This document shows positions 19,704 to 63,584 of a DNA stretch of 64,000 nucleotides, in pieces. Numbering within the stretch: the first letter of the stretch is position 1; each line of letters starts with the position of its first letter. The position numbers were made by a program, and so were the translations under genes. The DNA comes from Chrysemys picta bellii (taxonomy: Eukaryota). The DNA lies in contig NC_088794.1 in NCBI RefSeq assembly GCF_011386835.1, positions 57,722,001 through 57,786,000 of the forward strand, read 5' to 3'. Below the pieces are notes generated by a model. It did no database searches, was not told the DNA's origin, and saw nothing but the letters and a program-made list of their open reading frames with translations.

Positions 19704-19937
<234 letters not shown>

Positions 19938-20558: not shown

Positions 20559-20771
<213 letters not shown>

Positions 20772-21016: not shown

Positions 21017-21211
<195 letters not shown>

Positions 21212-21372: not shown

Positions 21373-22053
<681 letters not shown>

Positions 22054-41136: not shown

Positions 41137-41192
41137 CCTTAAAATGGGTAAATGAATGTTGCTGTTTCATTTGATCCCAATCCCAAAGGTGA

Positions 41193-41284
41193 ATCTGAAG
41201 AAGTTTTTTTTTTTTACCCACAAAAGCTTATGTCCAAAGAAATCTGTTAGCCTTTAAGGTGCCTCTGGACTCCTCATTGTTTTT
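41193..41284 (+). mobile_element. Penelope-like terminal fragment with a decayed hammerhead
   Basis: ATCTGAAGAAG...ACCCACAAAAGCTTATG...TGTTAGCCTTTAAGGTGCC; perfect 10-bp TSD CCAAAGGTGA. Confidence 0.8.
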
Positions 41285-41998
41285 CCAAAGGTGACTGTGC
41301 ATCCTATCCTCTGCTAGCGATTGGCACAAGATTCATGTAAAGCTTAGCCAAGGGAACATATTGATGACTTACATTTGTTTTTTTTAAAGCTACTGCATCT
41401 TGCTGCAGTCTTGATCTCTTTCCAACCTCAGTAATATTGCCTCTATTCTCTGTATTATTTATTTATTTACTTGGTTATTTTTGTATTCTGTTAGTACCTA
41501 AAGACAAGGATGAGGATTTGGACTGTGGTAGCATCCCAGACTTCCAGAGTGGTTCACATTTATTCTAAATTGATAAAATCTGAGAGCTCCCTGGTCCAGA
41601 CTAGTCTGCTCCAATTTTAGGATTAAATAAGCATGTGGATATATAAAATTTTACATAGTGCCTTTCACTACAAAGGATCCCAGAGTGCTTTATAGGCTGT
41701 ATACAAACGGGTCACTCACCACTGAAATGCAATTCAATGGAACATGATTTTTCAACAGCACAGAGCAACAGTACACAATCGGGTAGGAATAAGAAGTGTT
41801 GAATATTACACCCATTCAAAATACAGAAGGCACTTTAGTAGGTTACCGTGATACTGTTGATGTGCCGGTAAATTTCATATCTGTTAGACTGAAAACACTG
41901 TACTGAACTTGCAACAGGATGAATTTTGAAAGTTATGGAGACTGAATTTTTTTTTACTGAATAGTGACTGATTAAAACTGTTTTTCTTCTGCCATCAG

Positions 41999-42068
41999 GG
42001 CTATTCTGAATCCCCGGACTTGGAGTTTGAATATGCAGACACAGATAGATGGTCTGCAGAGCTGTCGG
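41999..42068 (+). CDS. STRIP1: STRIP1 exon 2
   Basis: GYSESPDLEFEYADTDRWSAELS; AG/GT flanks. Confidence 0.96.
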
Positions 42069-42495
42069 GTAAGGAAATTAAACCTAATGTTTAAATTAAC
42101 TTGTTTTTGGCTCAGTGGTCCGTAAAAGAACACGATCGACTCAAAAATAATATATTTTTCATGATTGTTTTTAGCTTAATAACACATTAGTTAATTAAAG
42201 CTAATAGGATTTTAACAATCATTATTTTTGCCATATACCCTGCTTTTCTTTTTTGCATTTCCCACCTTGGACAACCAGGCTAGTCAGTTTCACTTGACTT
42301 GCTTGTCAGTTTCAGCTTTCAGTTCTCATACTAGTGGATGTAGTGTTTGGATCCCAAATACTTTAGAAACTTACATCCAGATAAACTCTTTCCACTGGAA
42401 ATAATATTTTAAATACCGAAAATAATTTCTATTGAATTTCACTTATGTAAAACATTGTTCTGAGATCTTTTATGTTTTGAGCATTTGAGTATACA

Positions 42496-43594
42496 TAAGC
42501 CCCGTCGTTTTCAGTTTAAACCAATTTTTACTGAAAAAATGTCCAGGTTTTACAAAAAGTATTACTCATTTTTTTCTGATTTTCACCCTACTTTCGTATC
42601 ATTCAAATATATAAATAATAACTTGTTTTATTAGGAAAATACAATACATTGCGTGAGATTTATGTATTATGATAATACATTAGTCTGTGTGTGTATATGC
42701 AAAGCTGACTGTTGAAGTAAGACTATGTGTTAGTCTAGAAGATACACACAATAACAAACAGGCAGGCATAGGCACGCACTTATTTTGTGTATCTGAACGT
42801 ACTAGTGAATCTCACGCCCACCACTTGCACATTTCAAGCTGTTAGCAGATAGTGGTTTAAAGATTTGGCACGCTAAAATAGGAAGAAAACAAAAATCCGT
42901 ATCAGAATAAGTTTCAGAATACAAGGAAGTATTCGAAAGTTTAAAAAAAACCAAACAGGAGAAAAGGATGAAGTTGAGTGTACGCGCTGCAAATGGTGTG
43001 GCCCAATTATTAAATGTAAATATTTATAGGGCAATAGTTCTAAGTTTACAACAGTAAACCGTTTATTCAAATGAAAAGTTTTATTTGAGGATTAGAGATA
43101 TGTTGTTTTCTTAAACTCAGACGTGGCATTGTGTTTTGAGTTCTGTTTTAGTTTCTGCAGCAAACCACATTGATGAACGAAATTCAAAGCATTACAGGTC
43201 TGTCTCATCTTACGCGGGGGTTCCGTTCTGCGGTTAGCACGTAAAGCGAAAACTGCGTATAGTCAAAATTACATTGAGTTCAGTGGTGGGCGGAATCGCC
43301 CGCACTACAGGTACAGTATTAAAATTGTTATTTTTCTCTTTTTTTTGTTTTTGCCGACCGCGTAAAGCTGAAATCGCGCATGTTAAATGCGCATAAGATG
43401 CGACAGACCTGTAATCGACTGAATAATTTTTTCCCTGTCTTTCTGTCCGCCAAAATAAATCCCAATATTTACCCAGAAAAATTACTAACATTTTTTGCCC
43501 CGATTTTTCACCTGTTTTGGTTGCTGTGATAATAAACACTGATAAATTGTCTGGAAAAAATAAATAAAATAAAAACTGAAAACAAAGGACCCTA
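42496..43594. mobile_element. AT-rich non-autonomous hAT-like element, about 1.1 kb
   Basis: Imperfect TIRs (17/22); 8-bp TSD AGTATACA/AGTGTAGA (6/8). Confidence 0.6.
43195..43411. mobile_element. Tc1/mariner (Tigger-like) MITE nested in the hAT element
   Basis: 22-bp TIR CAGGTCTGTCTCATCTTACGCG (20/22 match to the other end); TA TSD. Confidence 0.9.
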
Positions 43595-43860
43595 AGTGTA
43601 GAAAACTTCAGTGATGAGAAATCTTTTAAAAAAAAATTAATATAATTAGTATGAATAGAAAAAACCCATAGCAGCAATTTCCAGGTAACAAGTCAAACCA
43701 TGCCGATTCTAATGCTCACAGAGTCCAATAAACATTAAGTGTGATATGACTGAAGTGAAGTTCGTGCTCCTTAGTTTCACAGCTGAGAACTGGTTAGTTT
43801 TTGGGAGGTGTTTTCTGTTTGGATGCAGAAATGAAATTGACAGTGATGCTCTCTTGGCAG

Positions 43861-43935
43861 AACTATACAGCTACACAGAGGGTCCGGAGTTCCAGCTGAA
43901 TCGAAAATGCTTTGAGGAGGATTTTAGGGTCCACG
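43861..43935 (+). CDS. STRIP1: STRIP1 exon 3
   Basis: ELYSYTEGPEFQLNRKCFEEDFRVH; AG/GT flanks. Confidence 0.96.
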
Positions 43936-44390
43936 GTAAGAGAACTGTCTTCTCCCTCCCACATCGTACTATGGAGATGATGTCACCTGTAGAACATAGA
44001 CAGTAGGAGACAGAAGTATTGATGTGCTGCTATCTCTGTGTCAGAAGGAAGGAACCAGCCACGTACATTGATTCCTTGTTTACCTTAGCTGGTGTTTGCT
44101 GACAAATGTTGTCAATGTTCACAGGACACCTTCTAATATGCCTCACCTGTGAACTGGAGGGGAAAGAGTAGGTTCGTGTCTGTGGCCTAATCAGCACTTA
44201 GGCTATCAAAATGTGCTAGGTGGTTAATTGGTGCTGACTGTGGCTGTGCTGTAAGATGTGGAAGTCTGTCCATTAAGAACAACCATCTCATTTTATGAAG
44301 GTTGTTGTCTGTACTGACTTCTGATCACCGCTGATGTGGATTCAAACAGATGAGTCTGATTAATTCTGTCCTGTACTAGAAGGCTTTAGT

Positions 44391-45105
44391 CCGGGGTGGG
44401 CAAACTTTTTGGCCTGAGGGCCACATCGGGTTTCTGAAATTGTATGGAGGGCCGGTTAGGGAAGGCTGTGCCCCCCCAAATAGCCAGGCGTGGCACGGCC
44501 CCCACCCCCCTATCCAGCCCCCCCCTGCTTCTTGCCCCCTGACGGCCCCCCAGGACTCGTGCCCCATCCAACCCCCCCGTTCCCTGATGGGACCCCTGCC
44601 CAATCCACCCTTCCCTGTGCCCTGACCGCCCTTGGAACCCCTGTCTGTCCCCCGCCGCCCAATCCAACCCCTCCACTCATTCCTGACTGCCCCCCTGGGA
44701 CCCCTACCCCATCCAACCACCTTCTTCCTGTCCCCGGAACCCTTGCCCCTGCCTGCCCCCCACTGCCCCATCTAACCCCCCCCCCCCCGACTGCTCCCCC
44801 GGGACCCCTGTCCCCATTCCACCCCCTTGTTCCCCGCCCTCTGACTGCCCCGCCCCCTATCCACACCCCTGCCACCTGACCACCCCCCCAAACTCCCCTG
44901 CCCTCTATCCAACCCGCTCCCTGCCCCCTTACCGCGCTGCCTGGAGCACCAGTGGCTGGCGGCGCTACAGCTGCACCGCCCAGAGCATTGCGCTGGCGGA
45001 GCGGCGAGCTGAGGCTGCGGGGGAGGGGCCGGGGGCTAGCCTCCCGGGCCAGGAGTTCAGGGGCTGGGCAGGAGGGTCCCGCGGGCTGTAGTTTGCCCAC
45101 CTCTG
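44391..45105. mobile_element. Charlie-type hAT element with a C-rich/CpG-rich interior
   Basis: TIR CCGGGGTGGGCAAACT/AGTTTGCCCACCTCTG; CTTTAG in both flanks. Confidence 0.85.
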
Positions 45106-45377
45106 CTTTAGAGTTCCCTCTGCCTGGCCCCTTGATGATCAGACGTACCTATGCTTTGTCCCATGGCTGTGATGAGTGCCCTGTCCAAATTGACAGTCTG
45201 GCTCTCTATTTATGCTGAATGCTCTGAATTTTCCTCTCTTCATTTTACATCCGATGAGAGAACTGCGGTTGTAACTGCTTCATAGTTTCATGGCTTTTGG
45301 AGAGGGGGAGAAATATACACCCCCGTCCAGCTGTGGGGAGCAACCTCACACAAAACTAGCTGTGTTTGGCTTTTCAG

Positions 45378-45512
45378 TGCTGGATAAAAAATGGACCGAG
45401 CTGGACAACAGCCAGCATCGTACCCATGCCATGCGGCTTCTTGATGGGCTGGAGGTCACTGCCAGGGAGAAGAGGCTCAAGGTGGCCCGAGCCATCCTCT
45501 ACGTCGCACAAG
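45378..45512 (+). CDS. STRIP1: STRIP1 exon 4
   Basis: VLDKKWTELDNSQHRTHAMRLLDGLEVTAREKRLKVARAILYVAQ; AG/GT flanks. Confidence 0.96.
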
Positions 45513-46532
45513 GTATGTTGCAGTGTCGGCAGAAGAATTGGTCCTGTTCTGAAATCCCTGTTAACTTTTCTGTGTAGAATCTTTATTAAAGGGGCACCCA
45601 GGTTAGAAATCATCTGTTTAACACCAGCTTCCCTCCCCATGTCCCTGGTCACACCTGCAGCCGTTAGATCGGAATTAACTTGTTACGATTGCTGCCATCT
45701 TACCTGTTGTGCATTCAATGAGTCATTTTCACCTTTATTTCTAGTTGGGTTCCTGTTTAGGGGCTCGATTCTGAAGCATAAGGGGTAGCCCAGGAGGGTC
45801 TGGGGCAAAGGTTGATTTAAGCTGCGGAGCTGCATCCTCCAAAAGCGCCTCGAATAATAATAATAATTAGTATGTTGTTTAAAATGCCTTTGCAATACCC
45901 ATGTTCTTCCTGCACTGAGGGCTGCTGTGGCCCCAGTCAAATTAAGAGCAGCTTGGGCTTTGTCTGCCAGTGGAATGCTCCATAGGCCAGAATGGCTGTG
46001 GGGCTGAGCACTGTCCCCACTCCCTCTCCTACCCCCAGGCCTGTCCCCTATGCTGTGGGCAGCATGGGGCCACGCACCTGAGCCTTACAGAGCTGCCACA
46101 GCGAGGGGAATTCTCCCTCTGGCGGTTGTATCCATTTTACACTCCCTATATCAGATCAGCGTGTATGGGCCGGGGACGGGGCCAAAATCTGGCCCCAGGT
46201 TCTCCTGCACTAGCTCAATGTGGTAAAGTTTGGGTTGCAAATGCTTCAGGGGAAATCTTTAAATCCAAATGCATAATTTTAACTGAAAAATATTTCTCTT
46301 AAATACTTTTGTCCAACTTCTAACCAAGTAGATGGGGCACCGGAACGGGAGTTGATCTAATTTCTTTTTTTTCCCTGAGACCTGGAGCAAGTTTCTTCCC
46401 CTCTCCGTGCCTGTCTTCCTGTCTGTCATCCGTGGATCAGATTCGCATGGGCTCTCTGAGGCTTGCTTGAATGTCTGTGAAGTGCACTGAGATTCTTGAC
46501 GGAAAGGTGATCCAATAATAACGTTATTACAG

Positions 46533-46653
46533 GCACCTTCGGAGAGTGCGGTTCCGAGGCTGAAGTTCAAGCCTGGATGCGATATAACATTTTCTTGCTA
46601 CTGGAAGTTGGTACCTTCAACGCTTTGGTGGAGCTTCTGAACATGGAGATTGA
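46533..46653 (+). CDS. STRIP1: STRIP1 exon 5
   Basis: GTFGECGSEAEVQAWMRYNIFLLLEVGTFNALVELLNMEI; AG/GT flanks. Confidence 0.96.
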
Positions 46654-46778
46654 GTGAGTATCATGGGGCTGGGGATATGAAAAGCTGTGCCCGAAGAGTT
46701 TTGGTAACCTGTGCGTGAACTACTCCACCTGGATCTTTTTCCAGTTTGTGAAAGATGCTCACTTCCCAGCAGCTCTCT

Positions 46779-46848
46779 GCTCCCAATCCAGTTTCCGTTG
46801 GAGTCAGCGGGAAGGCTCCTGTTGACTTCAGTGGGGGTCGGATTGAGC
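46779..46848. mobile_element. Short palindromic MITE-like repeat
   Basis: CCAATCC...GGAGTCAGCGGGA / TCCTGTTGACTTC...GGATTGAGC arms. Confidence 0.5.
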
Positions 46849-47014
46849 TCTGTCTCCAAGGACCAGGGGCAATGTAGGCAGCAGTAAGTTTTGCAAGTTT
46901 CAGAGTGCTTCACGCGTGTCCTGGAGATACTGCCTCCAGGTCAGTCCAGTCAATCCTTGGTAAAAAGCAACAGAGGGTCCTGTGGCACCTTTGAGACTAA
47001 CAGAAGTATTGGGA

Positions 47015-47055
47015 GCATAAGCTTTCGTGGGTAAGAACCTCACTTCTTCAGATGC
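47015..47055 (-). ncRNA. Minimal type I hammerhead ribozyme motif
   Basis: Exact reverse complement of 47070-47110. Confidence 0.7.
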
Positions 47056-47069
47056 AAGGCATCTGCAAG

Positions 47070-47110
47070 GCATCTGAAGAAGTGAGGTTCTTACCCACGA
47101 AAGCTTATGC
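47070..47110 (+). ncRNA. Minimal type I hammerhead ribozyme motif
   Basis: GCAU-CUGAAGA-A-GUG(A)GGU-UCUU-ACCCAC-GAA-AGCU-U/AUGC: helix I GCAU:AUGC, stem II with a bulged A, palindromic helix III AGCU. Confidence 0.72.
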
Positions 47111-47625
47111 TCCCAATACTTCTGTTAGTCTCAAAGGTGCCACAGGACCCTCTGTTGCTTTTTACAGATTCAGACTAACATGGCCACCCTTCTGATACTC
47201 AATCCTTGGTGTGTCTATTCAGGCTGCCAACTGTGGTGGTCGATTTTGGCTACTAGGAGCTGAAGCCCTCCCCCACCCCGCCTCCAACCAGTGGTCAGTT
47301 GGTGGCAGCTGGGCTGGATTTGTACTGGAGATCTCACCTGTGTGCTCTCCAGAACACTTTTATTCTGCAAGGGGAAGAGGAGCAGGGAGGTAACGAATGG
47401 TCAGACACCCATTCTAGCGAGAATGGTTCTTCCCGGGGGTTAGTCCATTTAGCCAGTGAGCATGTTAGACGTGGCGCATCCTTAGGTCTGCCCTGAGCGT
47501 AGACTGCTAGTGCATTGTTGATGGGCGCCTGGGGGGAGAATCCACTAAGGATGAAGCCCTTTCACGTCGGCAGCGGGCTCCAGAGCAGAGACCTTTGCAC
47601 TTGAGGGAGGGGTTTCCGAGGGCAG

Positions 47626-47745
47626 GCCTGGGAGCTAGGAATTCCTGAATGCCAATCCTGGCTCTGACACTGACTCCCTTTGAGGCCTAGGGCAAATCAC
47701 TGCATTGCTGTGTCTGTTTTCCCATCTGAGAAATGGGGCTAAGTT
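47626..47745 (+). mobile_element. MIR-like SINE
   Basis: AATCCTGGCTCTGACACTGACT...GGGCAAATCACT...TTTTCCCATCTGAGAAATGGGG. Confidence 0.65.
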
Positions 47746-48108
47746 GTGGGGGTGCGGGGGGAGGTTTAGTGAGATGTTTAAGAAGCGCTGCTGCAGCAAG
47801 TACCGAATGTGATTTAGTTTCCCCTAGGAGAGAGTCGTACCCTTTCTGTGGGCCTCTGATCAACTGGGACTAATTTCCTCAGACATGAGGGACTCTGCGC
47901 TTGCTCCCTGTGTCGCCGGATTGATTTGGAGGCTTCCAGTGTTTGGCATCAGTAGAGTCTAGTCGTGTCAGATCCCAGTGGCAGCGATCAGCTCTCCTGT
48001 GTGGTTTAATTGGTTGTTTACGGTGGTGTTAAATCATCCAAGCTGCGTTTTCCCAGAGGGAGAGGTGGGCAACCTGATCTGAGGGTCTGAGTCTCTTTCC
48101 TCCCGCAG

Positions 48109-48177
48109 TAACAGCGCCGCCTGCAGCAGTGCCGTGAGGAAGCCCGCCATCTCCCTGGCCGACAGCACGGATTTGAG
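48109..48177 (+). CDS. STRIP1: STRIP1 exon 6
   Basis: DNSAACSSAVRKPAISLADSTDL; AG/GT flanks. Confidence 0.96.
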
Positions 48178-48299
48178 GTGAGTAAATGATGGGGAGATGC
48201 TGCTGAATGTTAGGCTTCAGGGTCTAAGCTGAAGGCCTGGGAGTTCAGAAAGGAGCTTTGGCAGGTGCGTTATGGGATTTGTTTCCTTCCTTTGAGAGG

Positions 48300-48470
48300 C
48301 AGTTCAGTCCAGCAGAGAGGGCTAGGAGTCAGGAGAATGGGCGCCATTTCCAGAGTGTTGACTCACTGTGGTCTCTTTGTGCCTCATTTACCCCACCTAT
48401 AAAATGGGTCTAATGGCACCCGCCTTTGTTAAAGTGTGTTGAGCTTTGGGCTCGAAAGGCACTGTAGACG
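48300..48470 (+). mobile_element. MIR-like SINE, degraded
   Basis: GGAGTCAGGAG...CTCTTTGTGCCTCATTTACCCCACCTATAAAATGGG. Confidence 0.55.
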
Positions 48471-48849
48471 TGCTCAGCTCATTAGCATCTCTGCAGGATC
48501 AAGTACAGCCTGCTGCTGGAGGCTGGATACTGGACTGATGGACCAGTAGGGCTTGCCATGCAGGGTCAGACTGTCTCCTAATCCATGTACACAGTGAGTT
48601 ACTTCTACTGGGTCAAAAGACGGGGGGCAAAGAGGTGAGGAGTGGAGCACACTCTCTCAGCCTTTTCAGGTTGGTGACCCCTTATCTGAAGTTAGAAATT
48701 TTCACTACCCTCTTTTATTTATTAAGAGTAAAAAGTGTATCAATAATGCCGATGCAGAGCCTAGATAATTGGTTAGTTTGTGTGTTACCAGAGAGGGAAT
48801 CCTTGACCTGCTTTCTGCCTGTGGTACACAATAGTTTCGTCTTCTGAGG

Positions 48850-48979
48850 GCTGTAACACTTTGGTCTAATTCTGGTTGTTGGCTTGGTGCGGGGCTGACT
48901 GGGGGATATTCTGTGGCCTGTAATATACAGTTGGTCAGACTGATCATCTAGGGGACCCTTCTGGCCGTAAACTCTATGA
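48850..48979 (+). mobile_element. CR1 3'-end fragment (older subfamily)
   Basis: TTCTGTGGCCTG...GGTCAGACT...CCCTTCTGGCCGTAAACTCTATGA, resembling a recalled CR1 tail. Confidence 0.6.
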
Positions 48980-49281
48980 CCTTGAAGGACCCTGGGTGGG
49001 GAGGGGAAGAGGGTTCAACATCTCGTGATTCCTCCCCACCCCCGGAGGCCATGACCTGCCAGTTGGGTAACACTCCTCCAGAGGGTTTCTTACCCCCAAC
49101 TCCAATATCTAGCTCTAGTCCCCTTGAGTCTGATCTGTTCCTCGTGCGGGATATGGACAAATGGGAGCAGAACATGACTGCCTTTCTAAGTGTTGCTGGA
49201 GCCAGCAGGTCATAGGCGCCTCTGAGACCTGCTCCCCTCTCGGTCATCCATTGGTCCTGTCTGATTCTCTGCGGTTTGCAG

Positions 49282-49388
49282 GGTGTTGCTGAACGTCATG
49301 TACCTGATCGTAGAGACGGTCCGGCAGGAGGCTGAGGGAGACAAGGTTGAGTGGAAGACGATGAGGCAGACTTTCCGAGCAGAGCTAG
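49282..49388 (+). CDS. STRIP1: STRIP1 exon 7
   Basis: RVLLNVMYLIVETVRQEAEGDKVEWKTMRQTFRAEL; AG/GT flanks. Confidence 0.96.
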
Positions 49389-49444
49389 GTAGGAGCCTCC
49401 CCTGGGATGTCCCGGGTGTGTAATGGTGGGGTGGGTAGGTTACA

Positions 49445-49810
49445 GCAGTGTTCTCTGCAAGGTGATGAGCCGGGGCCTGGAATCTCTGTAGTGGTTCGAA
49501 TCTGGCCCGTTTGGTAGTGACCAGCAGTCCTCCGCTTACAGCAGTTCAGTGGCCTGTGTGAAGTGAATTACTGGGTCCCATTCCAATTCCCAGGTGACAT
49601 GGGCCCACTCTGCAGAATCCATTCCCAACGCTCTTCTTGTCTGTCTTGGCAAATCAGCCAAAGCCTGAATGGGCCATGGAGACAGGATTCTTTTGCTGTT
49701 AGTGGAGGATTCCTCTGGGGCAGGGTTAAGCTACACCGGAGGGGGCAGAGCCAAGGAAGCCAGCATTCCCATTGCTTGTGCTGTATCTCTGCTGTGGAGT
49801 CTGGTCTCTG
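49445..49810 (+). mobile_element. LF-SINE-like ancient SINE, near full length; ends approximate
   Basis: Collinear blocks matching recalled LF-SINE: TGGTTCGAATC...GGTAGTGACC; GTTCAGTGGCCTGTGTGAAGTGA; GCCAAAGCCTGAATGGGCCATGGAGAC. Confidence 0.75.
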
Positions 49811-50026
49811 GGGCCATCCTTGCCCAGCATCAGAGTTATTTGTAAGCAAATACGGTAGATTCTGAACTTCAGAAGGGAGGAGAGGATGAGGGCAGGGGTG
49901 AGCAGGTAGGGGATGGGATGGTGAAGTTAGGAACATGCGGAAGCTCTGCCCTGAAAGGGAGGTGGTGATGGGAGGGTGGGCGGCTCCTCAGGTGAGCATG
50001 GCTGTTATCGGTGTGTTTGCTTCCAG

Positions 50027-50154
50027 GGGCCCCGCTGTATAACAACGAGCCATTTTCCGTTATGCTCTTCGGAATGGTGACCAAATTCTGCAGCGGCCAC
50101 GCCCCACACTTCCCTATGAAGAAGGTGCTGCTGCTGCTCTGGAAAACTGTGCTG
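50027..50154 (+). CDS. STRIP1: STRIP1 exon 8
   Basis: [43 protein letters not shown]; AG/GT flanks. Confidence 0.96.
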
Positions 50155-54685: not shown

Positions 54686-54760
54686 GGGGAAGAGGAAGTG
54701 GAGCAAGTTCCTACGGAAACCCTGTACCAGGGCCTCCATCCCAGCCTGCCCCAGTACATG
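54686..54760 (+). CDS. STRIP1: STRIP1 exon 14
   Basis: GEEEVEQVPTETLYQGLHPSLPQYM; AG/GT flanks. Confidence 0.96.
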
Positions 54761-55232
54761 GTGAGTTGTGGCCACACTACAGATCCTAGGCCGAGCCCCG
54801 TCCCTTCCCACTCCCCCGCCTTGACCAGTACAGCTGGACTTTCCTCTCCAAACTTACATTGGAGTGGGCCTGATCCCATGATCTTAGCCTCTTTCCACTG
54901 GTATGTGCCAAGTCATACTGGATCACTCCTTTCCCTGTCCGTTGGCGTGTGCTTGATTGTTCCCTCTGCTGCTTCAGACCCATCTCCTGACAAGTGCCTG
55001 ATTGCCCCTGCTTGTGAGTATGTCCCCAGTCACATGACTTCTGCCCACCCCTGCCCTTTGGTATGTGCTCCCTCTTTGCAAATTGACACGCACCTTGTGG
55101 CATCCTCTCGCCTTTCCCCACCGCGTACCGAATTGAGGGCCATTAAGAACCTCGGCGTCAGCGCCCACAGCCCTGTTCTCTGCCCTCGGAGGCCCTTCCC
55201 AGCCTCACCCAGCTCTCGGATGCACTCCACAG

Positions 55233-55330
55233 ATTGCCTTGTTGAAGATCCTGCTGGCCGCAGCCCCCACCTCCAAAGCCAAGACGGATTCCATTAACAT
55301 CCTCGCGGACGTCTTGCCGGAGGAGATGCC
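55233..55330 (+). CDS. STRIP1: STRIP1 exon 15
   Basis: IALLKILLAAAPTSKAKTDSINILADVLPEEM; AG/GT flanks. Confidence 0.96.
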
Positions 55331-56257
55331 GTGAGTGCCCTTCTCTGGTGGCCTGGAGAAGCCGACGGCGGGGTGAATGGGGGGGTGAGAGAACAGGGGT
55401 GACTAGGTCTCTGGTAGGTAGAAGGCCCCTCCTGGCTTTGCATGGCAGCGCTTTAAGGCCTGGCTGGTTGTGCTGGAGCTGGGGAGTCTTCGCCAGCATC
55501 CAGACTGCGGCAGGTGACTCAGTTTCCTGTGCTGGGAGCAAGTCTGAACTCTGAGCTAGGAAATGGCCTGAAGCTAGACTCCCTAGATTCTGTCAGGTCT
55601 CTCGCGCTAAGCAGGGTTAGGCCTGACCCTTGCTTGGAGGGGAGATCTTTGGCTCACACCCAAGATTGCGCAGGTAGCGGTGCTGGTGACTGTAGCAGGC
55701 GCCTTCCCTCTGAGTCAGGACTTGCAGCGCTGGGGGCATTGTGCTAGCAGAGGTGTTCTCTTTCTGCTGAGATGTCAAGCTTGGTACAGATTCCAGGGCG
55801 TGTTAGCCCAGCGTCCTGGCCTAATTCCAACTAGTGTGCCAGTCTAAATTGTGGTTTCAATCCGATACGGGATTGGCCTCCCCTGAACATTCTCATGTTC
55901 TGTTAGCCGCTGCTGCCGTCCGCCCCAGAGATGGCCGCGTTTCAGCGGTGGGATGGAGTGGCTACAAACTAGGCATAGGGATCAGTTGGTTGACTGGCCA
56001 CCTTGGGATCTTTGGGGTGAAGTGTATCCTGGAAACCTTATTCGTTAATTAAAGGTAGCATGAGCGTATGGAGTTGCAGGAAAGGCCTTCAGGGGACAGC
56101 GGGATGATGGCTGTGGAGAGGGAGAGAAGGGGCAAGAGGCGGTGGGCTGTACTCCCTTGGTAGGATTGTGGTCTGGCTGTCTCTGGCCATCCCCTCTTCT
56201 GGGGACTGGTTACCCCCTCCCTGAGACGGGGGCTGAGATTGGGGCTTTGTCCTCCAG

Positions 56258-56384
56258 GACCACGGTGCTGCAGAGCATGAAGCTGGGCGTGGACGTGAAC
56301 CGGCACAAAGAGATCATTGTCAAGGCCATTTCTGCCGTGCTGCTGCTGCTGCTCAAACACTTCAAGTTGAATCACGTTTATCAG
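56258..56384 (+). CDS. STRIP1: STRIP1 exon 16
   Basis: PTTVLQSMKLGVDVNRHKEIIVKAISAVLLLLLKHFKLNHVYQ; AG/GT flanks. Confidence 0.96.
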
Positions 56385-56469
56385 GTAAACCTGGATGGGG
56401 ACCCCCGGGTGGGGGACTGCCGCCCCCGCCCCCCCGCACACAGATGCAGCTCACTAGGGGAACACGGAG

Positions 56470-56483
56470 CACCAGGGGGCGCT
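56470..56483 (+). promoter_or_regulatory. CTCF-like binding motif
   Basis: CACCAGGGGGCGCT matches the CTCF core consensus; lies in STRIP1 intron 16. Confidence 0.65.
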
Positions 56484-56525
56484 CAGGTCTGCTTGCTTAT
56501 CTGCCTCCCTTATCTTTGCTCTTAG

Positions 56526-56626
56526 TTTGAGTACATGGCCCAGCACCTGGTGTTTGCCAACTGCATCCCACTCATCCTGAAATTCTTCAATCAGAACATC
56601 ATGTCTTACATCACTGCCAAGAACAG
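56526..56626 (+). CDS. STRIP1: STRIP1 exon 17
   Basis: FEYMAQHLVFANCIPLILKFFNQNIMSYITAKN; AG/GT flanks. Confidence 0.96.
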
Positions 56627-57209
56627 GTAACAGGGTGCCCAGGGCTTGCTGTACCACCAGGCCCTTCGCTGACCCTGCATCTGCTATGGAGTGGGATTGC
56701 TGCACAGTGGGGTGCCCCTACCATCACTAAACCTGCAGCAAGCTACCCAAGTGGGTTGTGGGGTACCTGATGGGGTCCCTCACCATCACTGACCATGCCA
56801 TGGGGTATCTGGTGGGGGCCCCCCGTCACTGGCCCAGTGTGACGTACTGAGTGGTTGTGGGGTGCCTTGAGGGCCCCCAACACTGCACCCACAGTGGGGT
56901 ACCCAGTACCTGCTCCCCCTCCCCAAGTGCTGCTCCTGCCGTGGGGCCCATAGGAAGGGAGCTGTTCTCGAATCTCTCCCATCAGACTCCCTTCCACGCT
57001 ACTGAATCCCCAGCAACGTCCCCTCTCGGTTGTGGCCCAGGCACCAGGACCCGTTCTCAGTAAATGGACGTTGTCAGCTATCCCCAGCATGGGATCCTTC
57101 AGGAAGCTGCCCCGGGGGGTGCAGGGGACTCCATAGAGATCTCCCCACGCAAGGCTGGGGCTGTGCATCGGCAAGCAGGAGAGGCTGAGGCCCTCTCTTC
57201 TCCTTCCAG

Positions 57210-57276
57210 CATCTCGGTCTTGGATTACCCTTACTGCGTGGTGCACGAGCTCCCGGAGCTGACGGCAGAGAGTCTG
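57210..57276 (+). CDS. STRIP1: STRIP1 exon 18
   Basis: SISVLDYPYCVVHELPELTAESL; AG/GT flanks. Confidence 0.96.
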
Positions 57277-57699
57277 GTGAGCTCAGCCCCCTGCAGTGCC
57301 CTGCAGGCTGCCCCCCTCCTGCCTGTCATGTCCTTTCCCTGCTGGGGCCAGAGCACAGAGGGGCTGTAGGGGAAATGAGGAGAGCTCTCTGCAGCACCGG
57401 GAGGCCTGGCATGTGGGAGCAAGCCTGTAAGCACCCAGAGCAGGCGGCTGCTGCTCAGAGGGCTGGGGCAGTGCTGGGCTCTGGGCCTTGCTGTGACAGC
57501 CCAGGCTTTCCGGAGATCAGCTCCCCGCACATGTGACTGGGATCCAGGTAGCGCTAGGGGAGGGCTGGGTGGGAAGGGACTCCTGGCCTTCAGGTTGGCC
57601 CTGTATAGCATGAGCCTCCTCCCACAGGCAGCCCATCCCTGCGCGACACACCCCCAAGCCAGCTGCTCACCCTCCCACCCGGCTTTCATCTCTCTGCAG

Positions 57700-57804
57700 G
57701 AAGCTGGGGATAACAACCAGTTTTGCTGGCGGAACCTGTTCTCCTGTATAAACCTCCTGAGGATACTGAACAAGCTGACAAAGTGGAAACACTCCAGGAC
57801 CATG
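57700..57804 (+). CDS. STRIP1: STRIP1 exon 19
   Basis: EAGDNNQFCWRNLFSCINLLRILNKLTKWKHSRTM; AG/GT flanks. Confidence 0.96.
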
Positions 57805-58044
57805 GTGAGTAGGGGCCCATTGGATGTCGGGACCACAAGGTGCAGAGACCTGTGTGGGTGGGGGGCTGCGTAAGGCTCTATATGGCCTTAAAAACCTCCG
57901 CGTGTGGAGTGTGGGCTGAGTCTTCGATCCAGCCCATGTCCTGATGCCAGGGAGGGGTATGGATGGGCTCGGTGTACATGTGCCTGGCACAGCATTACGC
58001 ACTGCGTGTGCCCCGTGGCGCGGTGTGACCAGTGTGCCTCCTAG

Positions 58045-58249
58045 ATGCTGGTGGTGTTCAAGTCGGCTCCCATCCTGAAACGAGCCCTGAAGGTGAAGCA
58101 AGCCATGATGCAGCTCTATGTCCTGAAGCTGCTCAAGGTGCAGACCAAGTACCTGGGGCGGCAGTGGAGGAAAAGCAACATGAAGACCATGTCCGCTATC
58201 TACCAGAAAGTGCGGCACCGGCTCAACGATGACTGGGCCTATGGAAATG
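58045..58249 (+). CDS. STRIP1: STRIP1 exon 20
   Basis: MLVVFKSAPILKRALKVKQAMMQLYVLKLLKVQTKYLGRQWRKSNMKTMSAIYQKVRHRLNDDWAYGN; weak donor gtacca. Confidence 0.95.
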
Positions 58250-59049
58250 GTACCACCCCCACCCTCTGCCCATGGCCTCTCACGTGCCTGATTCATTGGG
58301 GTTGGGTTGAGCCCAAGGGAGTGCTTATCCCAGGGGGCATCTGCTCACTTTGCCCAATAGCAGGTCAGGCTGGCACCTGGCCAGGAGCCCAAAGGGCGTC
58401 GCTAATTGGCATAAAACGTAACAGGTCTTTAACATACCAGATGGAGGCGAAACATTGCATGCTGGGACCTGTAGTCTCCAGGAGGCTGTCCCTCCATATT
58501 ACAGATGAGGGCAGCTGCTTGGACAAAGATGGAGCATTGCATGCTGGGAGAGAATGGCATGGGTGGGTGAAGATGGAGCACTGCTGGCTTCATCTCCACC
58601 CTAAAGATGTGGGCAGCAGCAGTCGACCTAGCAACTGTGGTTGAGCTGCTCCCGTTTATACCCATCAGCTATCAGGAACTGGCAGCTGTAGGAACTCGCT
58701 CCCCAGGGCAGCTGTACCAACCTCCCATTATGGGGAGGTGGCATCCCAACTGCTATATGGGAGCAGCTCAGTGGTACAGTTAGCCCAGTATCCTGTCTCT
58801 TGGCAAAAGCCATAAAGCACCTAACTGCCCAGTGCCCTCCCTGACTCCCACTGGTGATAGCTCAAGCCCTGAAGCTTGGGCATTAGGAGCCCTGATCGTG
58901 GGATTCCTAATCAAAGGGACTTTTCCTCTTTTGACACTCGTGGGCAGGGGCAGCTGCCTGTCCAAGGAGGGAGAGGGTAGGCAAGGTATGACCAGGAGAC
59001 CACCTTCCCCAGGCTATATAGGCCTAATGTCCTCCCCCTTCTGCCCTAG

Positions 59050-59297
59050 ATCTGGATGCGCGCCCCTGGGACTTCCAGGCGGAGGAGTGCGCCCTGCGAG
59101 CCAGCATCGAGCGCTTCAACTCCCGGCGCTATGACCGGGCGCACAGCAACCCTGACTTCCTGCCCGTGGATAACTGTTTACAGAGCGTGCTGGGCCAGAG
59201 GGTGGAGCTGCCAGAGGATTTCCAGATGAACTACGATCTATGGCTAGAAAGGGAAGTCTTCTCCAGACCTATCTCCTGGGAAGAACTGCTGCAATAA
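59050..59297 (+). CDS. STRIP1: STRIP1 exon 21, coding part
   Basis: DLDARPWDFQAEECALRASIERFNSRRYDRAHSNPDFLPVDNCLQSVLGQRVELPEDFQMNYDLWLEREVFSRPISWEELLQ*. Confidence 0.96.
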
Positions 59298-59852
59298 TGC
59301 CTGTGTGACATTAGGGGGCCCTGCAGAGACTTGGAGCTGGGGCTAACGTGCCGAAGGGACGATGCCGGGAATGGTCGAGTTCCTCTTCCTCATCCACTGA
59401 AGGCATGTTCCAGGTGTGGCCTATGCTGCCTGGAACAGCTGTTCCTCCCTCCTTCTCCAGATGGCAGCCTGGCTTCATCCCACCTGCTCAAGGACACAGC
59501 AGCACCAGTCACAGGCCTTTGCGGGGACCCAACAGCCGCTGCAGTTCCTGGTGAAGCTTGTGCCGACTGGGTTCCTGGGTCGCTTGGCTTCCACGCTGTT
59601 CAGTGAGGGGTCTGGGGGGAGGACAGATCTCCTCCATCATCCCCAAGACACTAGAGTCCAATCCCATCCGAGGGAAGCATGTTCCTTGGCCCCACTGCTT
59701 GGCTCAGACAGGGCTCTATGCTCTGCCTCCGTGCCGGGGGTTGGATGTGGCTGCCGGTTCTGGTCCCAAACCAGTCACTCCTGCCCACTCAGTGTGGTGC
59801 TCTGTCCCCCTCTAGTGGTGGTTGAGCCTCCTACAGCTTTGGCCAACTCATC

Positions 59853-59925
59853 TGGGGTCTCCACTCAGGCTGCAGAGGCTCCTGCTTTTAAAACCGGAAG
59901 TCCCGGGTTCAATCCCCACGGAGGA
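59853..59925 (+). pseudogene. Degenerate tRNA(Lys)-like sequence or SINE head in the STRIP1 3'UTR
   Basis: CTCAG...AGAG (D arm), CTTTTAA (anticodon loop), GGGTTCAATCCC (B box); no acceptor stem. Confidence 0.5.
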
Positions 59926-60369
59926 TGACTCACCCAGGGCATGGCATCACTCTAGCCACCTGCCTTTTCCTACCTCCTTCCCTGGCCAGAGGCGGGGAGA
60001 GCAGCCTCGGGTAAGGCAGAGGTGTGGGGGGCATAGAGAGGGGCTCGGGAAGAGGGTGTGGGGAGCAACAGGCTCGGTGCTGCCACCTAGTGTGTGCAGG
60101 AAGGTGGAGTGGTGGTAGCAGCAGCCTGTGCTCTCACCAATGCCAGGGCTGGGCATAGCCGAAAAGACCCCAAGCAAACAAGGTGGCTGATGCTAGGATG
60201 CAGGGGACATGGTGAGTGGAGAAGGGACCTTCATTTGGAGCTGGGCTGCTGTCCCGCCTCACCCCGCTTGGTGGCGCAGGGGAGCTGTACATATCTATAA
60301 ATAGCCCTGTAACCATTCCTCCTGCGTAACTCCAAATGCCAGGTTTTTAATGTCTTTGTGACTCTTTGC

Positions 60370-60375
60370 ATTAAA
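60370..60375 (+). terminator. Probable STRIP1 poly(A) signal ATTAAA
   Basis: ATTAAA preceded by a U-rich stretch (GTTTTTAATGTCTTTGTG), about 1.07 kb after the stop codon. Confidence 0.6.
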
Positions 60376-61089
60376 CAATCTGTTGCGCTTGGACTTGGCT
60401 TGAGCTAGGTGTGGGGCTCCTCCATCCTGCAGAGCAGCTGCTCCCTGCCGATATCCAGCAGGCCCCTACAGCTTCCCATCCACCTTCCCCAATTGGGCCT
60501 TTTCTGCTCTTGAGGCCACCCCAGTCTCCCCTTCTTCCATCAGGCCTTGAGCCCAAGGCTCTGTGGGCCAGCCTGTCTCAGTAGCTGTGCCCGCAATGGG
60601 GGTCTGGCTGTTCTGGCAGCTGGACCAACCTGCTCCTTCCTAGCTTGCAGCTTAGCCCCTCTTAAACACACAAGGTTTTTCTCCTTGGCCAATGACCGTG
60701 AGCCAGGCAGGGTTTCCAGTGTCCTCTGATCGCCCCTGGGTCTGCCCATACAGCCGATCCCCATGCCAGGTGCTAGCAGAGCGGGTGAGGTGGGGACAAG
60801 GGCAGGCATTAGAAGATTCGGGTGACAAAAGTTGGGGGTGAGTTATTGACCCCTCTCTACATAGCTCTGGTGGGATGCGCCCTGTCTTGCTGTGTCCATG
60901 GATGGATAAGATGGTAGTTCCGACCAGAACACTGCAGGTGATCAGGGGGCTGCAGAGATTGATAGCTGAGGGGGGCAAGGAACATAGCTGGGCTAAGTGA
61001 CCACTGAAGCTGGGCTGGGGACTACATGTCCCCAGTGATGAGGAGGGTGAGGTGGCCAGTGGGCTGGTGTCTCAAAGGTGCTTAGCTAA

Positions 61090-61504
61090 TGTCAAGGGTC
61101 AGGTCCTGTAGCAGAGCCAGCTCTGGGTAATCTGACGAGCACAGCTGGCCTGCAGTAGACTGCTTGATTGGCTACCCTGCCTGATTGGCGGCAAGAGTCA
61201 GCAGACCAGCTCTTAAACCCAGCAGCCGTTTGGTGGCTGCTCAAAGCATTCGCCCACGGCTGTGATAATTTCTGGGCGTTCTTGTTCCCAGCCCTCTTCC
61301 TGCCTCGGACCCAACCCTGCTCCCGCTTTGCCTCATCCAGCTCTGACCCTTGGCTCCTATTCCCAACTTTGGCTCTGACCCATGGCCTCTGGCATCTGAC
61401 TCCAGTTCTCAGCCTGGGCTCCTATTCCTGGCTCCCAACTCCTGTCCTAACCACTAGGTATGACTCTCACTCCAACCAGTTGGCATGACTGCCCACATCG
61501 GACA
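61090..61504 (+). mobile_element. LTR-like element; boundaries uncertain
   Basis: Two GATTGG boxes, a CTTAAA TATA-like motif, internal CTCTGACCC/GGCTC repeats typical of turtle LTRs; no TSD found. Confidence 0.45.
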
Positions 61505-62569
61505 ACGAAGAGGAATAGGGTGAAAGCAATTGTGCGAAATCTGCTTACTTATGAAACCTATAAGCCTGTGGAGGGGCCTCCTAAGGGAAGCAGGGGAAGC
61601 CTTGTGTGGGCCATTTGTGGGCATGAGGCACGAGAATGACGAGACTGTGGGGCACTGTCCCATCTTGTCAGGACACCCCGGCTAGCTCCCCTTGTGGTCA
61701 GGTGGTGCTGTGGCTGCACAGCCTGTGCCAATGATGCAAGTTCACTGTTACAGCTGTAGCCAGCAGTTTATGGTGTGGAACTCATATCCTCCGTTGTCAG
61801 TGCCATGGGGACTGGCAGGGCTGCCAATTGCCTGCCTCTGGCTCCTTGGCCTTCTTCCTGTACCACCCCCACAACTGAGGCAGGCTAGAGCCAGCAGGGA
61901 TTAAAAAGATGGGGAGGGGGGAGGCTGCGGTGCTAGTGAATGTGGCTGCTGGTGCTTTGAAGTTGAGGTTATAGGCTGAACCAGGCTCTCTTCAGAGCCC
62001 CTCTGATGCAGTCCCACGCCCTGTCCTGGAGCTTCCAGCCTGTGGCTGCTGGTATGGACCAGCCCATTCCTGCTCCTGCTGTCTCTGCAGAAGCTGCTGC
62101 GGCTGGGGGCCGTGCGAGGAGGCATTGCTTCTGGCTCAGGCAGCGGCTGGGGATGTGGCAGCCATCGCAGGCTTCCAGAATATTTTGTTGTTGGCGAAAC
62201 AGACAGAATCAGTTTCACAGCCCGGCTTGTGCTGCTTTGCCTTCTAGCCAGAGCCCTTTTGAGAGAAGGGTGGAATGGATGTGGAAAGGTAGGGTCACTG
62301 CCCTCTGAATGCAGGGGGGCTACTGTTTTAAAGCAGGTGGGGAGCCTCTGTATACTGCATGATGGATCATGTTGGGTGTCTTCTACATTCCCTGGCCAGA
62401 GAAATCACTGCATATTCCAGAGCTCCTCCCATGATCAGCCTGCACATCCCATGTGGTACAGCGGCACCTCCTGAGATTAGAGCCCCAGTATGCGACGTGA
62501 TGTACATATATGTGCAAAGAGCCGGCCCGTGCCCTAAGCAGCTGATGGTCTATACAGACAAAGGGTGGG

Positions 62570-62665
62570 GTTCCTGTCCTTGACAGATGGGAACAGAAAG
62601 ATGAAGGGACTTGCCCAAAGTCCCCTGGACAGGTTAGAGTTTGAACCCAGATCTCCTGGGAACAG
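62570..62665 (-). mobile_element. MIR-like SINE
   Basis: ACAGATGGGAACAGAAAG...GACTTGCCCAAAGTC...TTTGAACCCAGATCTCCTG. Confidence 0.6.
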
Positions 62666-63365
62666 GAGATCTCATGGTTCAGGGTTTCAGCTGGCCCCCA
62701 GCAGGGGTCAGGAAGGGAATTACCCCCCATGCAGTGTGGAAGGGCTTTTTTAAATACTTCCTCAGAAGCAGCAGGGATGGCAATGGCTGGAGAGGGGACG
62801 TTGGGTGGGGTGGGCCAGGGCTCCCAGGTGCTTGGCTGGCTGGTTCTCGTTCACACGCTCAAGGTCTAGCCAATCGCTGGTGTAGGCTTGGGAAGGAATT
62901 TCCCCCCAGGTCAGAATGGCAGGGACCTTGGAGCTTTTCACCTTGCTCTGCAGGGTGGAGTGTGGGTCACTTGCTGAGATCATCTGGGTCTGGCTCACTC
63001 AATTCCTTGGCATTGTAGGGGCCTGGGGCACTAGTGCATCTTGGTCCCTCTTGTTCTGTCCCTGTGACGCAGCCATCTGGTCACCTATGGGCTGGGATAT
63101 GTTGGTCTCTGTCTGGTTGGTGGGGGCAGTGTGCAGATGCTGGTGGCCTGTGATGTTGGGGGGGCCAGATGGGATGAGCTCATGGTCATTTTGGGCCTTG
63201 AACTCTCTGACTCCTGCACCCAGCCCAGTGCTTTACCCTGCTAGCCCTTACCAGCTGTGCGGATGGCGCTAGTCCCCTTGCTGCATGCCACTGTGCCCCA
63301 TCCCATAGAGTGCTGTTTGGTAACCTCCCGCTATGCCTTCTCTTGGGAGGTGCTCTGTTTACTGA

Positions 63366-63487
63366 TTTCAGAGTAGCAGCCGTGTTAGTCTGTATCCTCA
63401 AAAAGAACAGGAGTACTTGTGGCACCTTAGAGACTAACAAATTTATTAGAGCATAAGCTTTCGTGGGCTACAACCCACTTCTTCGGA
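63366..63487 (-). mobile_element. Penelope-like terminal fragment with a hammerhead variant
   Basis: TTTCAGAGTAGCAGCCGTGTTAGTCTG...GGCACCTTAGAGACTAAC...AAGCTTTCGTGGGCTAC; perfect 10-bp TSD TGTTTACTGA. Confidence 0.9.
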
Positions 63488-63490
63488 TGT
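63451..63490 (-). ncRNA. Minimal hammerhead motif, U4C core variant
   Basis: (A)CAU-CCGAAGA-A-GUGGGU-UGUA-GCCCAC-GAA-AGCU-U/AUGC. Confidence 0.55.
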
Positions 63491-63584
63491 TTACTGAGTG
63501 ATCTTTGACCTACCCCTCAGCCCTGCTACTGGGCCTTCGAGCCAAAGCTTGATTCCTGCCAAAGCCCCTCCCCCAGCAGCCCTC

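What the first reader, a model, noticed from the sequence alone, without database searches (positions are those of the whole stretch)
41183..63497. Three Penelope-like insertions share one architecture: 5' end at the hammerhead edge and a 10-bp TSD
Seen: three diverged insertions (41193-41284 +, 46961-47199 +, 63366-63487 -) each have a clean ~10-bp TSD (CCAAAGGTGA, CAATCCTTGG, TGTTTACTGA). In each, the sense copy begins 1-4 nt upstream of the C(U/C)GAAGA core. That is the 5' strand of helix I, not the predicted cleavage site (GCUU/AUGC) about 35 nt downstream. Known: Penelope-like elements carry minimal hammerheads in their pseudo-LTRs. Inference: random 5' truncation is unlikely to hit the same few bases three times, so a defined 90-130 nt ribozyme-headed unit may be mobilised like a SINE or retrozyme, or the ribozyme fold may stop reverse transcription. 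A simpler explanation is that these are solo pseudo-LTRs whose natural boundary lies here. Three copies is a small sample.
Basis: partly seen in the sequence, partly recalled or inferred. Interest (0 to 1): 0.78.

Follow-up and report, generated by a model that had tools for sequence, protein, structure and literature searches.

The report
Mini Penelope insertions sharing one start
Three tiny, dead copies of a very abundant Penelope-like retrotransposon all start within a few bases of its hammerhead ribozyme motif; that start is a preferred end genome-wide, but it looks like the natural edge of the element's end module rather than a new kind of ribozyme-driven mobile unit.

Summary
The window has three insertions with perfect 10-bp target duplications, and no other copies of this family. 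Each carries a minimal Penelope-type hammerhead. The sense copies begin 1-4 nt (up to 8 in copy 2) upstream of C(U/C)GAAGA, not at the predicted cut (GCUU/AUGC).

The 92 versus 122-130 nt lengths are explained by known biology. The 3' ends lie 55-58 or 89-93 nt past the cut. That matches the two internal reverse-transcription start sites and the ~34-nt "tail" shown for the anole element Poseidon_Ac.

Contigs of three organisms, about 17,000-22,000 per run, were laid on copy 3. The hammerhead's 5' edge is the best-supported 5' break (148-174 contigs). The cut site is not among the top breaks. I estimate roughly one in four or five contigs continues into a conserved upstream sequence.

So a preferred 5' end is real. 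[quoted passage not shown] A self-transcribed SINE- or retrozyme-like unit is not shown: two of the three hammerheads are damaged and no promoter was found. An RT stop caused by the ribozyme fold is unlikely.

This scan has noted Penelope hammerhead insertions many times in this genome, some starting at the cut site. No full-length parent could be reached.

The parts
41183..41192 (.). Left target-site duplication of copy 1 (CCAAAGGTGA)
   Evidence: Exact 10-mer repeated at 41285-41294
41193..41284 (+). Copy 1: 92-nt insertion without tail. The hammerhead is decayed: core CTGAAGA at 41195-41201, a T-run in helix II, and AAAAGCTT. The predicted cut lies between 41229 and 41230. The 3' end is 55 nt after the cut.
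41285..41294 (.). Right target-site duplication of copy 1
46951..46960 (.). Left target-site duplication of copy 2 (CAATCCTTGG)
46961..47055 (-). Copy 2, antisense arm without tail. Its outer end is 58 nt after the cut. Its inner end is at -4 (GCAT) relative to CTGAAGA.
   Evidence: 100% reverse-complement of 47070-47165; alignment
47056..47069 (+). Copy 2 spacer, aaggcatctgcaag. AAGGCATCTG occurs at 47056 and again at 47067. I read these as two further sense restarts at -7/-8, that is, template jumps at an RNA 5' end (inference).
47070..47199 (+). Copy 2, sense arm with a tail of about 35 nt (47165-47199). The core CTGAAGA is at 47074-47080. The predicted cut lies between 47106 and 47107. The 3' end is 93 nt after the cut.
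47200..47209 (.). Right target-site duplication of copy 2
63356..63365 (.). Target-site duplication of copy 3 (TGTTTACTGA) on the element's 3' side
63366..63487 (-). Copy 3: 122-nt insertion with tail (63366-63399). The hammerhead is at 63486-63455 with core CCGAAGA (U4 to C). The predicted cut lies between 63455 and 63454. The stem GUUAGUCU (63438-63431) pairs with AGACUAAC (63391-63384). The 3' end is 89 nt after the cut.
63488..63497 (.). Target-site duplication of copy 3 on the element's 5' side. Its two bases next to the element (63488-63489, CA on the element strand) also match the family sequence, giving a 2-nt microhomology.

Best explanation
These are three dead-on-arrival mini-insertions of one very abundant Penelope-like element (PLE) family. 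Each consists only of the element's terminal cis module. That module is the minimal hammerhead, then a conserved stem-loop (GUUAGUCU...AGACUAAC), with or without a ~34-nt tail.

The element's GIY-YIG endonuclease made staggered cuts 10 bp apart. Reverse transcription started at one of the two internal start sites known for PLEs, 55-58 or 89-93 nt after the hammerhead cut position. [quoted passage not shown]

The common 5' end, 1-8 nt before CUGAAGA, is the natural 5' edge of this module. Most likely it is the 5' end of the RNA that was copied, whether a transcription start or a trimmed end just upstream of the ribozyme. An RT that loads at the start site nearest the RNA's 5' end then makes a 90-125 nt run-off product. 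Hammerhead self-cleavage did not make this end.

Shown: the anatomy, the TSDs, the spacing of the 3' ends, and the genome-wide preference for this 5' break. Inferred: that the break is an RNA 5' end, and what creates it.
For: - Minimal-hammerhead features described for PLEs are all present. These are CUGANGA, one unpaired nucleotide before helix II, the G10.1-C11.1 pair, GAAA, a palindromic AGCU and a 4-bp helix I.
- Cut-to-3'-end distances are 55, 58, 89 and 93 nt. In Poseidon_Ac the cut is after nt 29 and the tail spans about nt 85-119, which gives about 56 and 90 nt.
- The one-sided tail, the head-to-head inverted copy and 8-10 bp TSDs are all described for PLEs.
- About 17,000-22,000 contigs per run lie on the unit. 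The top 3' loose ends are at 63366 (with tail, 220-293 contigs) and 63399/63400 (no tail, 86-269). The top 5' loose end is at 63489, the hammerhead edge (148-174). The next 5' break, at 63467, has 34-47 contigs and reflects a subfamily difference in loop II.
- The cut site (63454/63455) is not among the listed breaks, so it has at most 34 contigs in X1 and 19 in X9.
- Loose letters at 63489 agree at 0.44-0.47. True flanks give 0.34-0.40. This fits a minority of copies continuing into a conserved upstream sequence (...TTTTCCACTCCATG before CATCTGAAG).
- Head-to-tail joints run from a tail, through about 8 nt, to ATGCAT-CTGAAG (table 5c).
- Copy 2 shows three ends at -4, -7 and -8, as expected from repeated run-off and template jumping at an RNA end.
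- Frangieh et al. found that the ribozyme is not needed for insertion and saw no RNA ends at the cut site.
Against: - No full-length member with an RT/GIY-YIG ORF could be fetched. Where its own 5' pseudo-LTR begins relative to the hammerhead is therefore unknown.
- All runs were contigs, not raw reads, so no RNA 5' end was observed.
- The estimate that only about a quarter of contigs continue upstream rests on consensus-agreement values. Diversity among subfamilies upstream of the ribozyme could bias it.
- The pile at 63489 pools copies that end there with all longer copies.
- In D. virilis Penelope the mapped transcription start is about 120 nt upstream of the ribozyme (46 nt after splicing), not at its edge.
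Confidence: 0.55

Rival explanations
1. The 90-125 nt unit is a non-autonomous element in its own right, SINE-like or a solo retrozyme. Master copies, perhaps short tandem arrays, would be transcribed into a discrete ribozyme-headed RNA that the PLE enzyme mobilises in trans.
For: - The family has a very high copy number.
- Most contigs that reach the hammerhead edge appear not to continue upstream (agreement 0.44-0.47).
- Head-to-tail unit-unit joints exist in the genome (table 5c).
- Published work derives non-LTR retrozymes, including solo monomers, from PLE pseudo-LTRs; the mean consensus in reptiles is 176 bp.
- Variants above 5% are absent from the hammerhead core, the conserved box and the tail stem (table 3).
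Against: - No promoter was found. The A/B-box-like strings overlap each other and do not have Pol III spacing (read by eye).
- Helix I is incomplete in copies 1 and 3, and the cores are mutated (U4C, G12A).
- The ends are not phased on the cut site, as ribozyme-processed or circular RNA would give.
- No tandem copy lies in the window.
- No discrete RNA could be tested, because only contigs were available.
Confidence: 0.22
2. The reverse transcriptase tends to fall off, or to switch template, just after leaving the hammerhead and protein-bound module. The end would then be an RT termination hot spot on longer RNAs rather than an RNA 5' end.
For: - The ends are ragged over -1 to -8.
- The PLE protein binds this region, and the ribozyme is protein-assisted.
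- Copy 3 has a 2-nt microhomology at its 5' junction.
Against: - A structural block should stop RT before the structure, on its 3' side. Here the whole hammerhead was copied.
- In vitro, 5'-truncated templates simply gave shorter products, and no stop at the ribozyme was reported.
- Repeated restarts at the same point in copy 2 look like run-off.
Confidence: 0.15
3. The match is a coincidence: three ordinary random 5' truncations that happen to end near the same base.
For: There are only three loci in the window, and the pattern was noticed after the fact.
Against: - P is about 0.01 even if ends are confined to 125 nt, and 2e-5 on 2.7 kb.
- The same position is the leading 5' break in about 150-170 contigs in each of three organisms.
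Confidence: 0.05

Closest known systems
5'-truncated or solo pseudo-LTR insertions of Penelope-like elements (Penelope/Poseidon/Neptune; Evgen'ev & Arkhipova; Arkhipova et al. 2013 PMC3846280; Craig et al. 2021 PMC8557442)
   Same: Heavy 5' truncation, an optional 30-40 bp tail at one end, a head-to-head inverted copy, TSDs of 8-10 bp, and a hammerhead in the terminal repeat.
   Different: Here the copies are cut down to the last 92-130 nt and share one 5' end at the ribozyme edge. A preferred 5' end at that point was not described in the papers I could read.
Poseidon_Ac (PAc) of Anolis carolinensis, with internal initiation of reverse transcription (Frangieh et al. 2024, PMC11167929)
   Same: Two RT start sites lie about 56 and 90 nt after the hammerhead cut, with the tail between them. 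The ribozyme is dispensable for insertion. The start sites are associated with a stem-loop.
   Different: In PAc the ORF starts inside the hammerhead and the tail is coding. In this family every frame through the unit has stops, so the module is non-coding. Outside the ribozyme core there is no evident sequence similarity.
Minimal hammerheads of PLEs (Cervera & de la Pena 2014, PMC4209133)
   Same: Short helix I, long helix II with one unpaired nucleotide before it, the G10.1-C11.1 pair, no real helix III, and a palindromic AGCU suited to dimers. The paper reports them in turtles.
   Different: Nothing new in the motif itself. Rfam hammerhead models do not detect it.
Non-LTR retrozymes and their solo monomers (de la Pena et al. 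2020 PMC7229834; Li et al. 2026 bioRxiv 10.64898/2026.07.22.740005)
   Same: Short non-coding units with a type I hammerhead, related to PLE pseudo-LTRs and probably mobilised by PLE enzymes. Monomers are scattered through genomes.
   Different: Retrozymes are defined by tandem units processed at the ribozyme cut into linear and circular RNAs. The window copies are single, TSD-flanked, bounded by the ribozyme edge and the RT start site, and carry a minimal hammerhead that is partly broken.

Membership tests
Penelope-like element (fragment of) | Minimal type I hammerhead in the terminal repeat: CUGANGA, an unpaired nucleotide before helix II, G10.1-C11.1, GAAA, and palindromic positions 15.2-16.2 | tested here: met
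   Read directly in copies 2 and 3 and compared with the criteria. Copy 1 is decayed.
Penelope-like element (fragment of) | Two alternative 3' ends separated by a 30-40 bp tail, at the internal RT start sites | tested here: met
   The 3' ends lie 55/58 and 89/93 nt after the cut. Genome-wide 3' loose ends fall at 63366 and 63399/63400.
Penelope-like element (fragment of) | Head-to-head inverted 5' copy and/or partial tandem, flanked by a TSD | tested here: met
   Copy 2 is a 96-bp perfect palindrome with a 10-bp TSD. Tandem and opposite-strand joints occur elsewhere in the genome.
Penelope-like element (fragment of) | An ORF with a telomerase-like RT and a GIY-YIG endonuclease in full-length members of the same family | not testable with these tools
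   There is no such ORF in the window; the ten longest ORFs gave only AHCYL1 and STRIP1 domains. The collections searched hold no relevant DNA.
Non-LTR retrozyme | At least two tandem units, each with a complete hammerhead | tested here: not met
   The window copies are monomers or a fold-back. A few head-to-tail joints exist elsewhere.
Non-LTR retrozyme | RNA processed at the ribozyme cut into unit-length linear and circular molecules | not testable with these tools
   Only Logan contigs were available. The cut site is not a leading break in the DNA copies.
SINE | Internal Pol III promoter (properly spaced A and B boxes, or a 5S/7SL-type head) | tested here: not met
   By eye there are only overlapping partial matches within helix II. 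No tRNA, 7SL or 5S match was found in Rfam.
Rfam hammerhead families | Score at or above the gathering threshold | tested here: not met
   There was no hammerhead hit even at E = 10. This is expected for motifs without helix III.

The most novel reading that the evidence does not exclude
In this reptile lineage, most of the tens of thousands of Penelope copies descend from a discrete short RNA of about 90-125 nt. This RNA would begin at the 5' edge of the hammerhead, made by its own transcription start or by trimming down to a protein-protected footprint, and end at the RT start sites. That would make it a SINE-like parasite, or an R-like mini-template, of the Penelope machinery. Its ribozyme would serve as a protein-binding head rather than as a cutter.
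Probability: 0.22. Interest if true: 0.6.

Novelty: new member of a known kind. Interest (0 to 1): 0.36.

Why it matters
How Penelope-like elements choose the ends of what they copy is only partly understood. The 3' start sites were mapped in vitro in 2024, but nothing comparable exists for the 5' end, and the role of the hammerhead is still open.

This window, together with the contig pile-up, shows two things for one abundant reptile family. The short copies end at the ribozyme's 5' edge far more often than at its cut site, and copies with a mutated core still spread. That argues against self-cleavage as the step that defines template ends. It also points to a specific RNA 5' end that can be looked for by experiment.

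For genome annotation these are ordinary dead fragments in the introns and flanks of AHCYL1/STRIP1.

Tried and rejected
- Rfam scans, at gathering threshold on the whole window and at E = 10 on two copies, gave no hammerhead. The only hits were sub-threshold miRNA-like matches caused by the palindrome.
- I looked for more copies in the window with patterns, BLAST word 7, nhmmer --max and a generic min-hammerhead scan. None turned up beyond the three insertions.
- I looked for copies outside the window. The metagenome scan gave one chance bacterial match (L001) and the viral scan gave nothing.
- I looked for a PLE ORF in the window to reach full-length relatives. None was found. I did not type the published PAc protein into a search, so the full-length parent stayed out of reach.
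- The upstream consensus recovered from loose ends is absent from the window.
- An ORF through the unit, as in PAc, does not exist; every frame has stops (read).
- MFE folding of the units is not better than shuffles (z = -1.1, -0.7 and +0.4). Only the GUUAGUCU/AGACUAAC stem is noteworthy.
- Hammerhead cleavage as the origin of the 5' end is rejected, because the end lies about 35 nt upstream of the cut.
- A ribozyme fold as an RT block is rejected, because the fold was fully copied.
- A spliced-leader or 3' splice site at helix I, as in D. virilis, is rejected. There is no AG in the family consensus before the edge and no exon sequence upstream in the copies.
- The RNA question could not be addressed. 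All 24 runs are contigs.
Full report
**What is there.**

- Copy 1 (41193-41284, + strand) is 92 nt long and lies between two copies of CCAAAGGTGA.
- Copy 2 (46961-47199) is 239 nt long and lies between two copies of CAATCCTTGG.
- Copy 3 (63366-63487, - strand) is 122 nt long and lies between two copies of TGTTTACTGA.

None of 200,000 random position pairs in the window had a 10-mer direct repeat placed like this. Pattern searches, BLAST with short words, nhmmer without filters and a generic minimal-hammerhead scan found no further copy in the 64 kb. The window covers exons of AHCYL1 and STRIP1 and holds no retrotransposon ORF among its ten longest ORFs.

**The ribozyme motif.** Copies 2 and 3 read GCAU-CUGAAGA-A-GUG(A)GG...CCCAC-GAAA-GCUU/AUGC. 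This matches the minimal hammerhead that Cervera and de la Pena described in the terminal repeats of Penelope-like elements, turtles included. It has a 4-bp helix I, one unpaired base before a long helix II, the G10.1-C11.1 pair, no real helix III, and a palindromic AGCU that lets two copies pair. Rfam's hammerhead models do not score it, which is expected for this variant. The motif is damaged in two copies. Copy 3 has CCGAAGA (U4 to C). Copy 1 has AAAAGCUU (G12 to A) and a T-run where the 5' strand of helix II should be.

**The 3' ends are explained by known biology.** Measured from the predicted cut, the copies end after 55 nt (copy 1), 58 nt (antisense arm of copy 2), 89 nt (copy 3) and 93 nt (sense arm of copy 2). 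Frangieh et al. 2024 showed that the anole element Poseidon_Ac starts reverse transcription at two adjacent internal sites, and that the optional ~34-nt "tail" of genomic copies is the stretch between them. In its consensus the cut is after nt 29 and the tail spans about nt 85-119, which is about 56 and 90 nt from the cut. The "90 to 130 nt" range is therefore simply tail versus no tail.

Copy 2 also has the classic one-sided tail and head-to-head inverted copy of these elements. In copies 2 and 3 the conserved box GUUAGUCU pairs with AGACUAAC in the tail. The first start site lies in the loop of this stem and the second lies beyond it.

**The 5' ends.** Relative to the C of CUGAAGA, the sense copies start at:

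- -2 in copy 1;
- -1 in copy 3, or up to -3 because the last two TSD bases also match the family;
- -4 in both arms of copy 2.

The 14-nt spacer of copy 2 holds AAGGCATCTG twice, which marks two more restarts at -7 and -8. All of these lie about 35 nt upstream of the predicted cut. They also fall within or just before the 4-nt 5' strand of helix I, so copies 1 and 3 do not keep a whole helix I. By simulation, three ends within 8 nt have P = 0.01 if ends were uniform over 125 nt, and 2e-5 over 2.7 kb.

**Genome-wide check.** Only Logan contigs were on offer. I laid the contigs of three DNA runs from three coded organisms, plus one possible RNA run, on 63306-63545 at 80% likeness.

- *Abundance.* Between 17,593 and 21,795 contigs per DNA run fell on the unit, so the family is very abundant.
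- *Age of copy 3.* Locus-specific contigs of all three organisms cross both junctions of copy 3 without a mismatch. This insertion is therefore shared by all three.
- *3' breaks.* The best-supported 3' breaks are at 63366 (tail end, 220-293 contigs) and 63399/63400 (no-tail end, 86-269). These confirm the two start sites.
- *5' breaks.* The best-supported 5' break is at 63489, the hammerhead edge, with 174, 169 and 148 contigs. The only other listed 5' break, at 63467 (34-47 contigs), is a subfamily with a T-rich loop II like copy 1.
- *Cut site.* The cut site (63454/63455) is not among the listed breaks, so it holds at most 34 contigs in X1 and 19 in X9. One tandem joint in X17 does start there. 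Earlier notes of this scan also describe such copies elsewhere in this genome.

**How many copies go on upstream?** The loose letters beyond 63489 give the same consensus in all four runs. On the element strand it reads ...TTTACTTCCTACTGTATTTTCCACTCCATG, followed by CAT-CTGAAGAAG. Longer copies therefore exist, and this is presumably the untranslated region that precedes the ribozyme. It resembles the pyrimidine-rich end of the Poseidon_Ac consensus.

The agreement of those letters is only 0.44-0.47 in the DNA runs. For calibration, true flanks at the no-tail end give 0.34-0.37, and breaks followed by 13-19 nt of family sequence give 0.5-0.6. If family sequence agrees at about 0.8, then roughly a fifth to a quarter of the contigs that reach the edge continue and the rest end there. 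This is an estimate, not a count. Subfamily diversity upstream would lower the agreement as well.

Several head-to-tail joints run from the tail end, through about 8 nt, into ATG-CAT-CTGAAG (table 5c). This is what a jump from the 5' end of one template to the start site of another would leave.

**Most likely mechanism.** The enzyme of a Penelope-like element nicked the target with a 10-bp stagger. It started cDNA synthesis at one of its two internal start sites and copied to the end of the template.

The template end lay just upstream of the ribozyme, so the product is the bare terminal module. An RNA that begins near the ribozyme carries a start site about 90-125 nt from its own 5' end. An enzyme that loads there makes exactly these dead mini-copies. 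In copy 2 both DNA strands were extended, as seen in vitro for PAc, and the repeated ends at -4, -7 and -8 look like repeated run-off.

What creates the RNA end is not shown. It could be a transcription start, or trimming down to a protein-bound structure. In D. virilis the mapped start lies further upstream, 46 nt before a 75-nt intron whose end abuts helix I. A start at the edge would therefore be a difference between families.

**Rivals.**
- *A self-sufficient SINE-like or retrozyme-like unit.* This is not excluded, given the high copy number, the tandem joints and published links between retrozymes and Penelope repeats. But it has no promoter, no cut-phased ends and no intact ribozyme in two of three copies.
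- *An RT stop caused by the ribozyme fold.* This is unlikely because the fold had already been copied.
- *Chance.* The statistics and the genome-wide pile-up exclude it.

**Comparison and novelty.** Every structural feature is already described for Penelope-like elements: the hammerhead, the tail, the fold-back, the TSDs and the heavy truncation. The one point I did not find in the papers I could read is the preferred 5' end at the ribozyme edge, and its dominance over the cut site. It is a modest addition that agrees with the 2024 finding that cleavage is not needed for insertion.

**Limits.**
- No full-length parent could be fetched.
- No raw RNA reads were available.

Noticed in passing
window 46960-47165: The 96-bp perfect palindrome of copy 2 gives strong but sub-threshold Rfam matches to several miRNA precursor families (for example mir-3179, 62 bits against a gathering score of 90). 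The cause is the hairpin shape, not homology. A long intronic hairpin in STRIP1 could still be a Drosha/Dicer substrate.
   Followed up: no
window 41204-41216 and loose ends at 63467: Copy 1's T-run in hammerhead loop II is not private decay. In each genome, 34-47 contigs break at the same point and continue with an A/T-run. This indicates a subfamily with a U-rich loop II that is prone to expansion.
   Followed up: partly
window 63485 (copy 3 core CCGAAGA): U4 of the catalytic core is C in this copy. That would mean ribozyme catalysis is not needed for spread.
   Followed up: no
window 21490-22056 (+) and 58045-58644 (+): ORFs contain an AdoHcyase domain piece (AHCYL1-like exon) and a DUF3402 piece (STRIP1 exon). 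The window therefore spans the AHCYL1-STRIP1 neighbourhood, with both genes on the + strand.
   Followed up: partly
window 63366 (3' end of copy 3): Loose letters beyond the tail end share about 6 nt (CCTGTC on the element strand) in all runs. Many copies therefore start reverse transcription a few bases further downstream than copy 3.
   Followed up: no
all three TSDs: All three target duplications are exactly 10 bp, about one helical turn, and their flanks are not AT-rich (43-53% GC). Published Penelope TSDs are more variable, and PAc prefers AT-rich sites.
   Followed up: no
L001 6965-6984: The only metagenome hit to the conserved 20-mer is a chance match in a bacterial-looking contig and is unrelated to the element.
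   Followed up: yes
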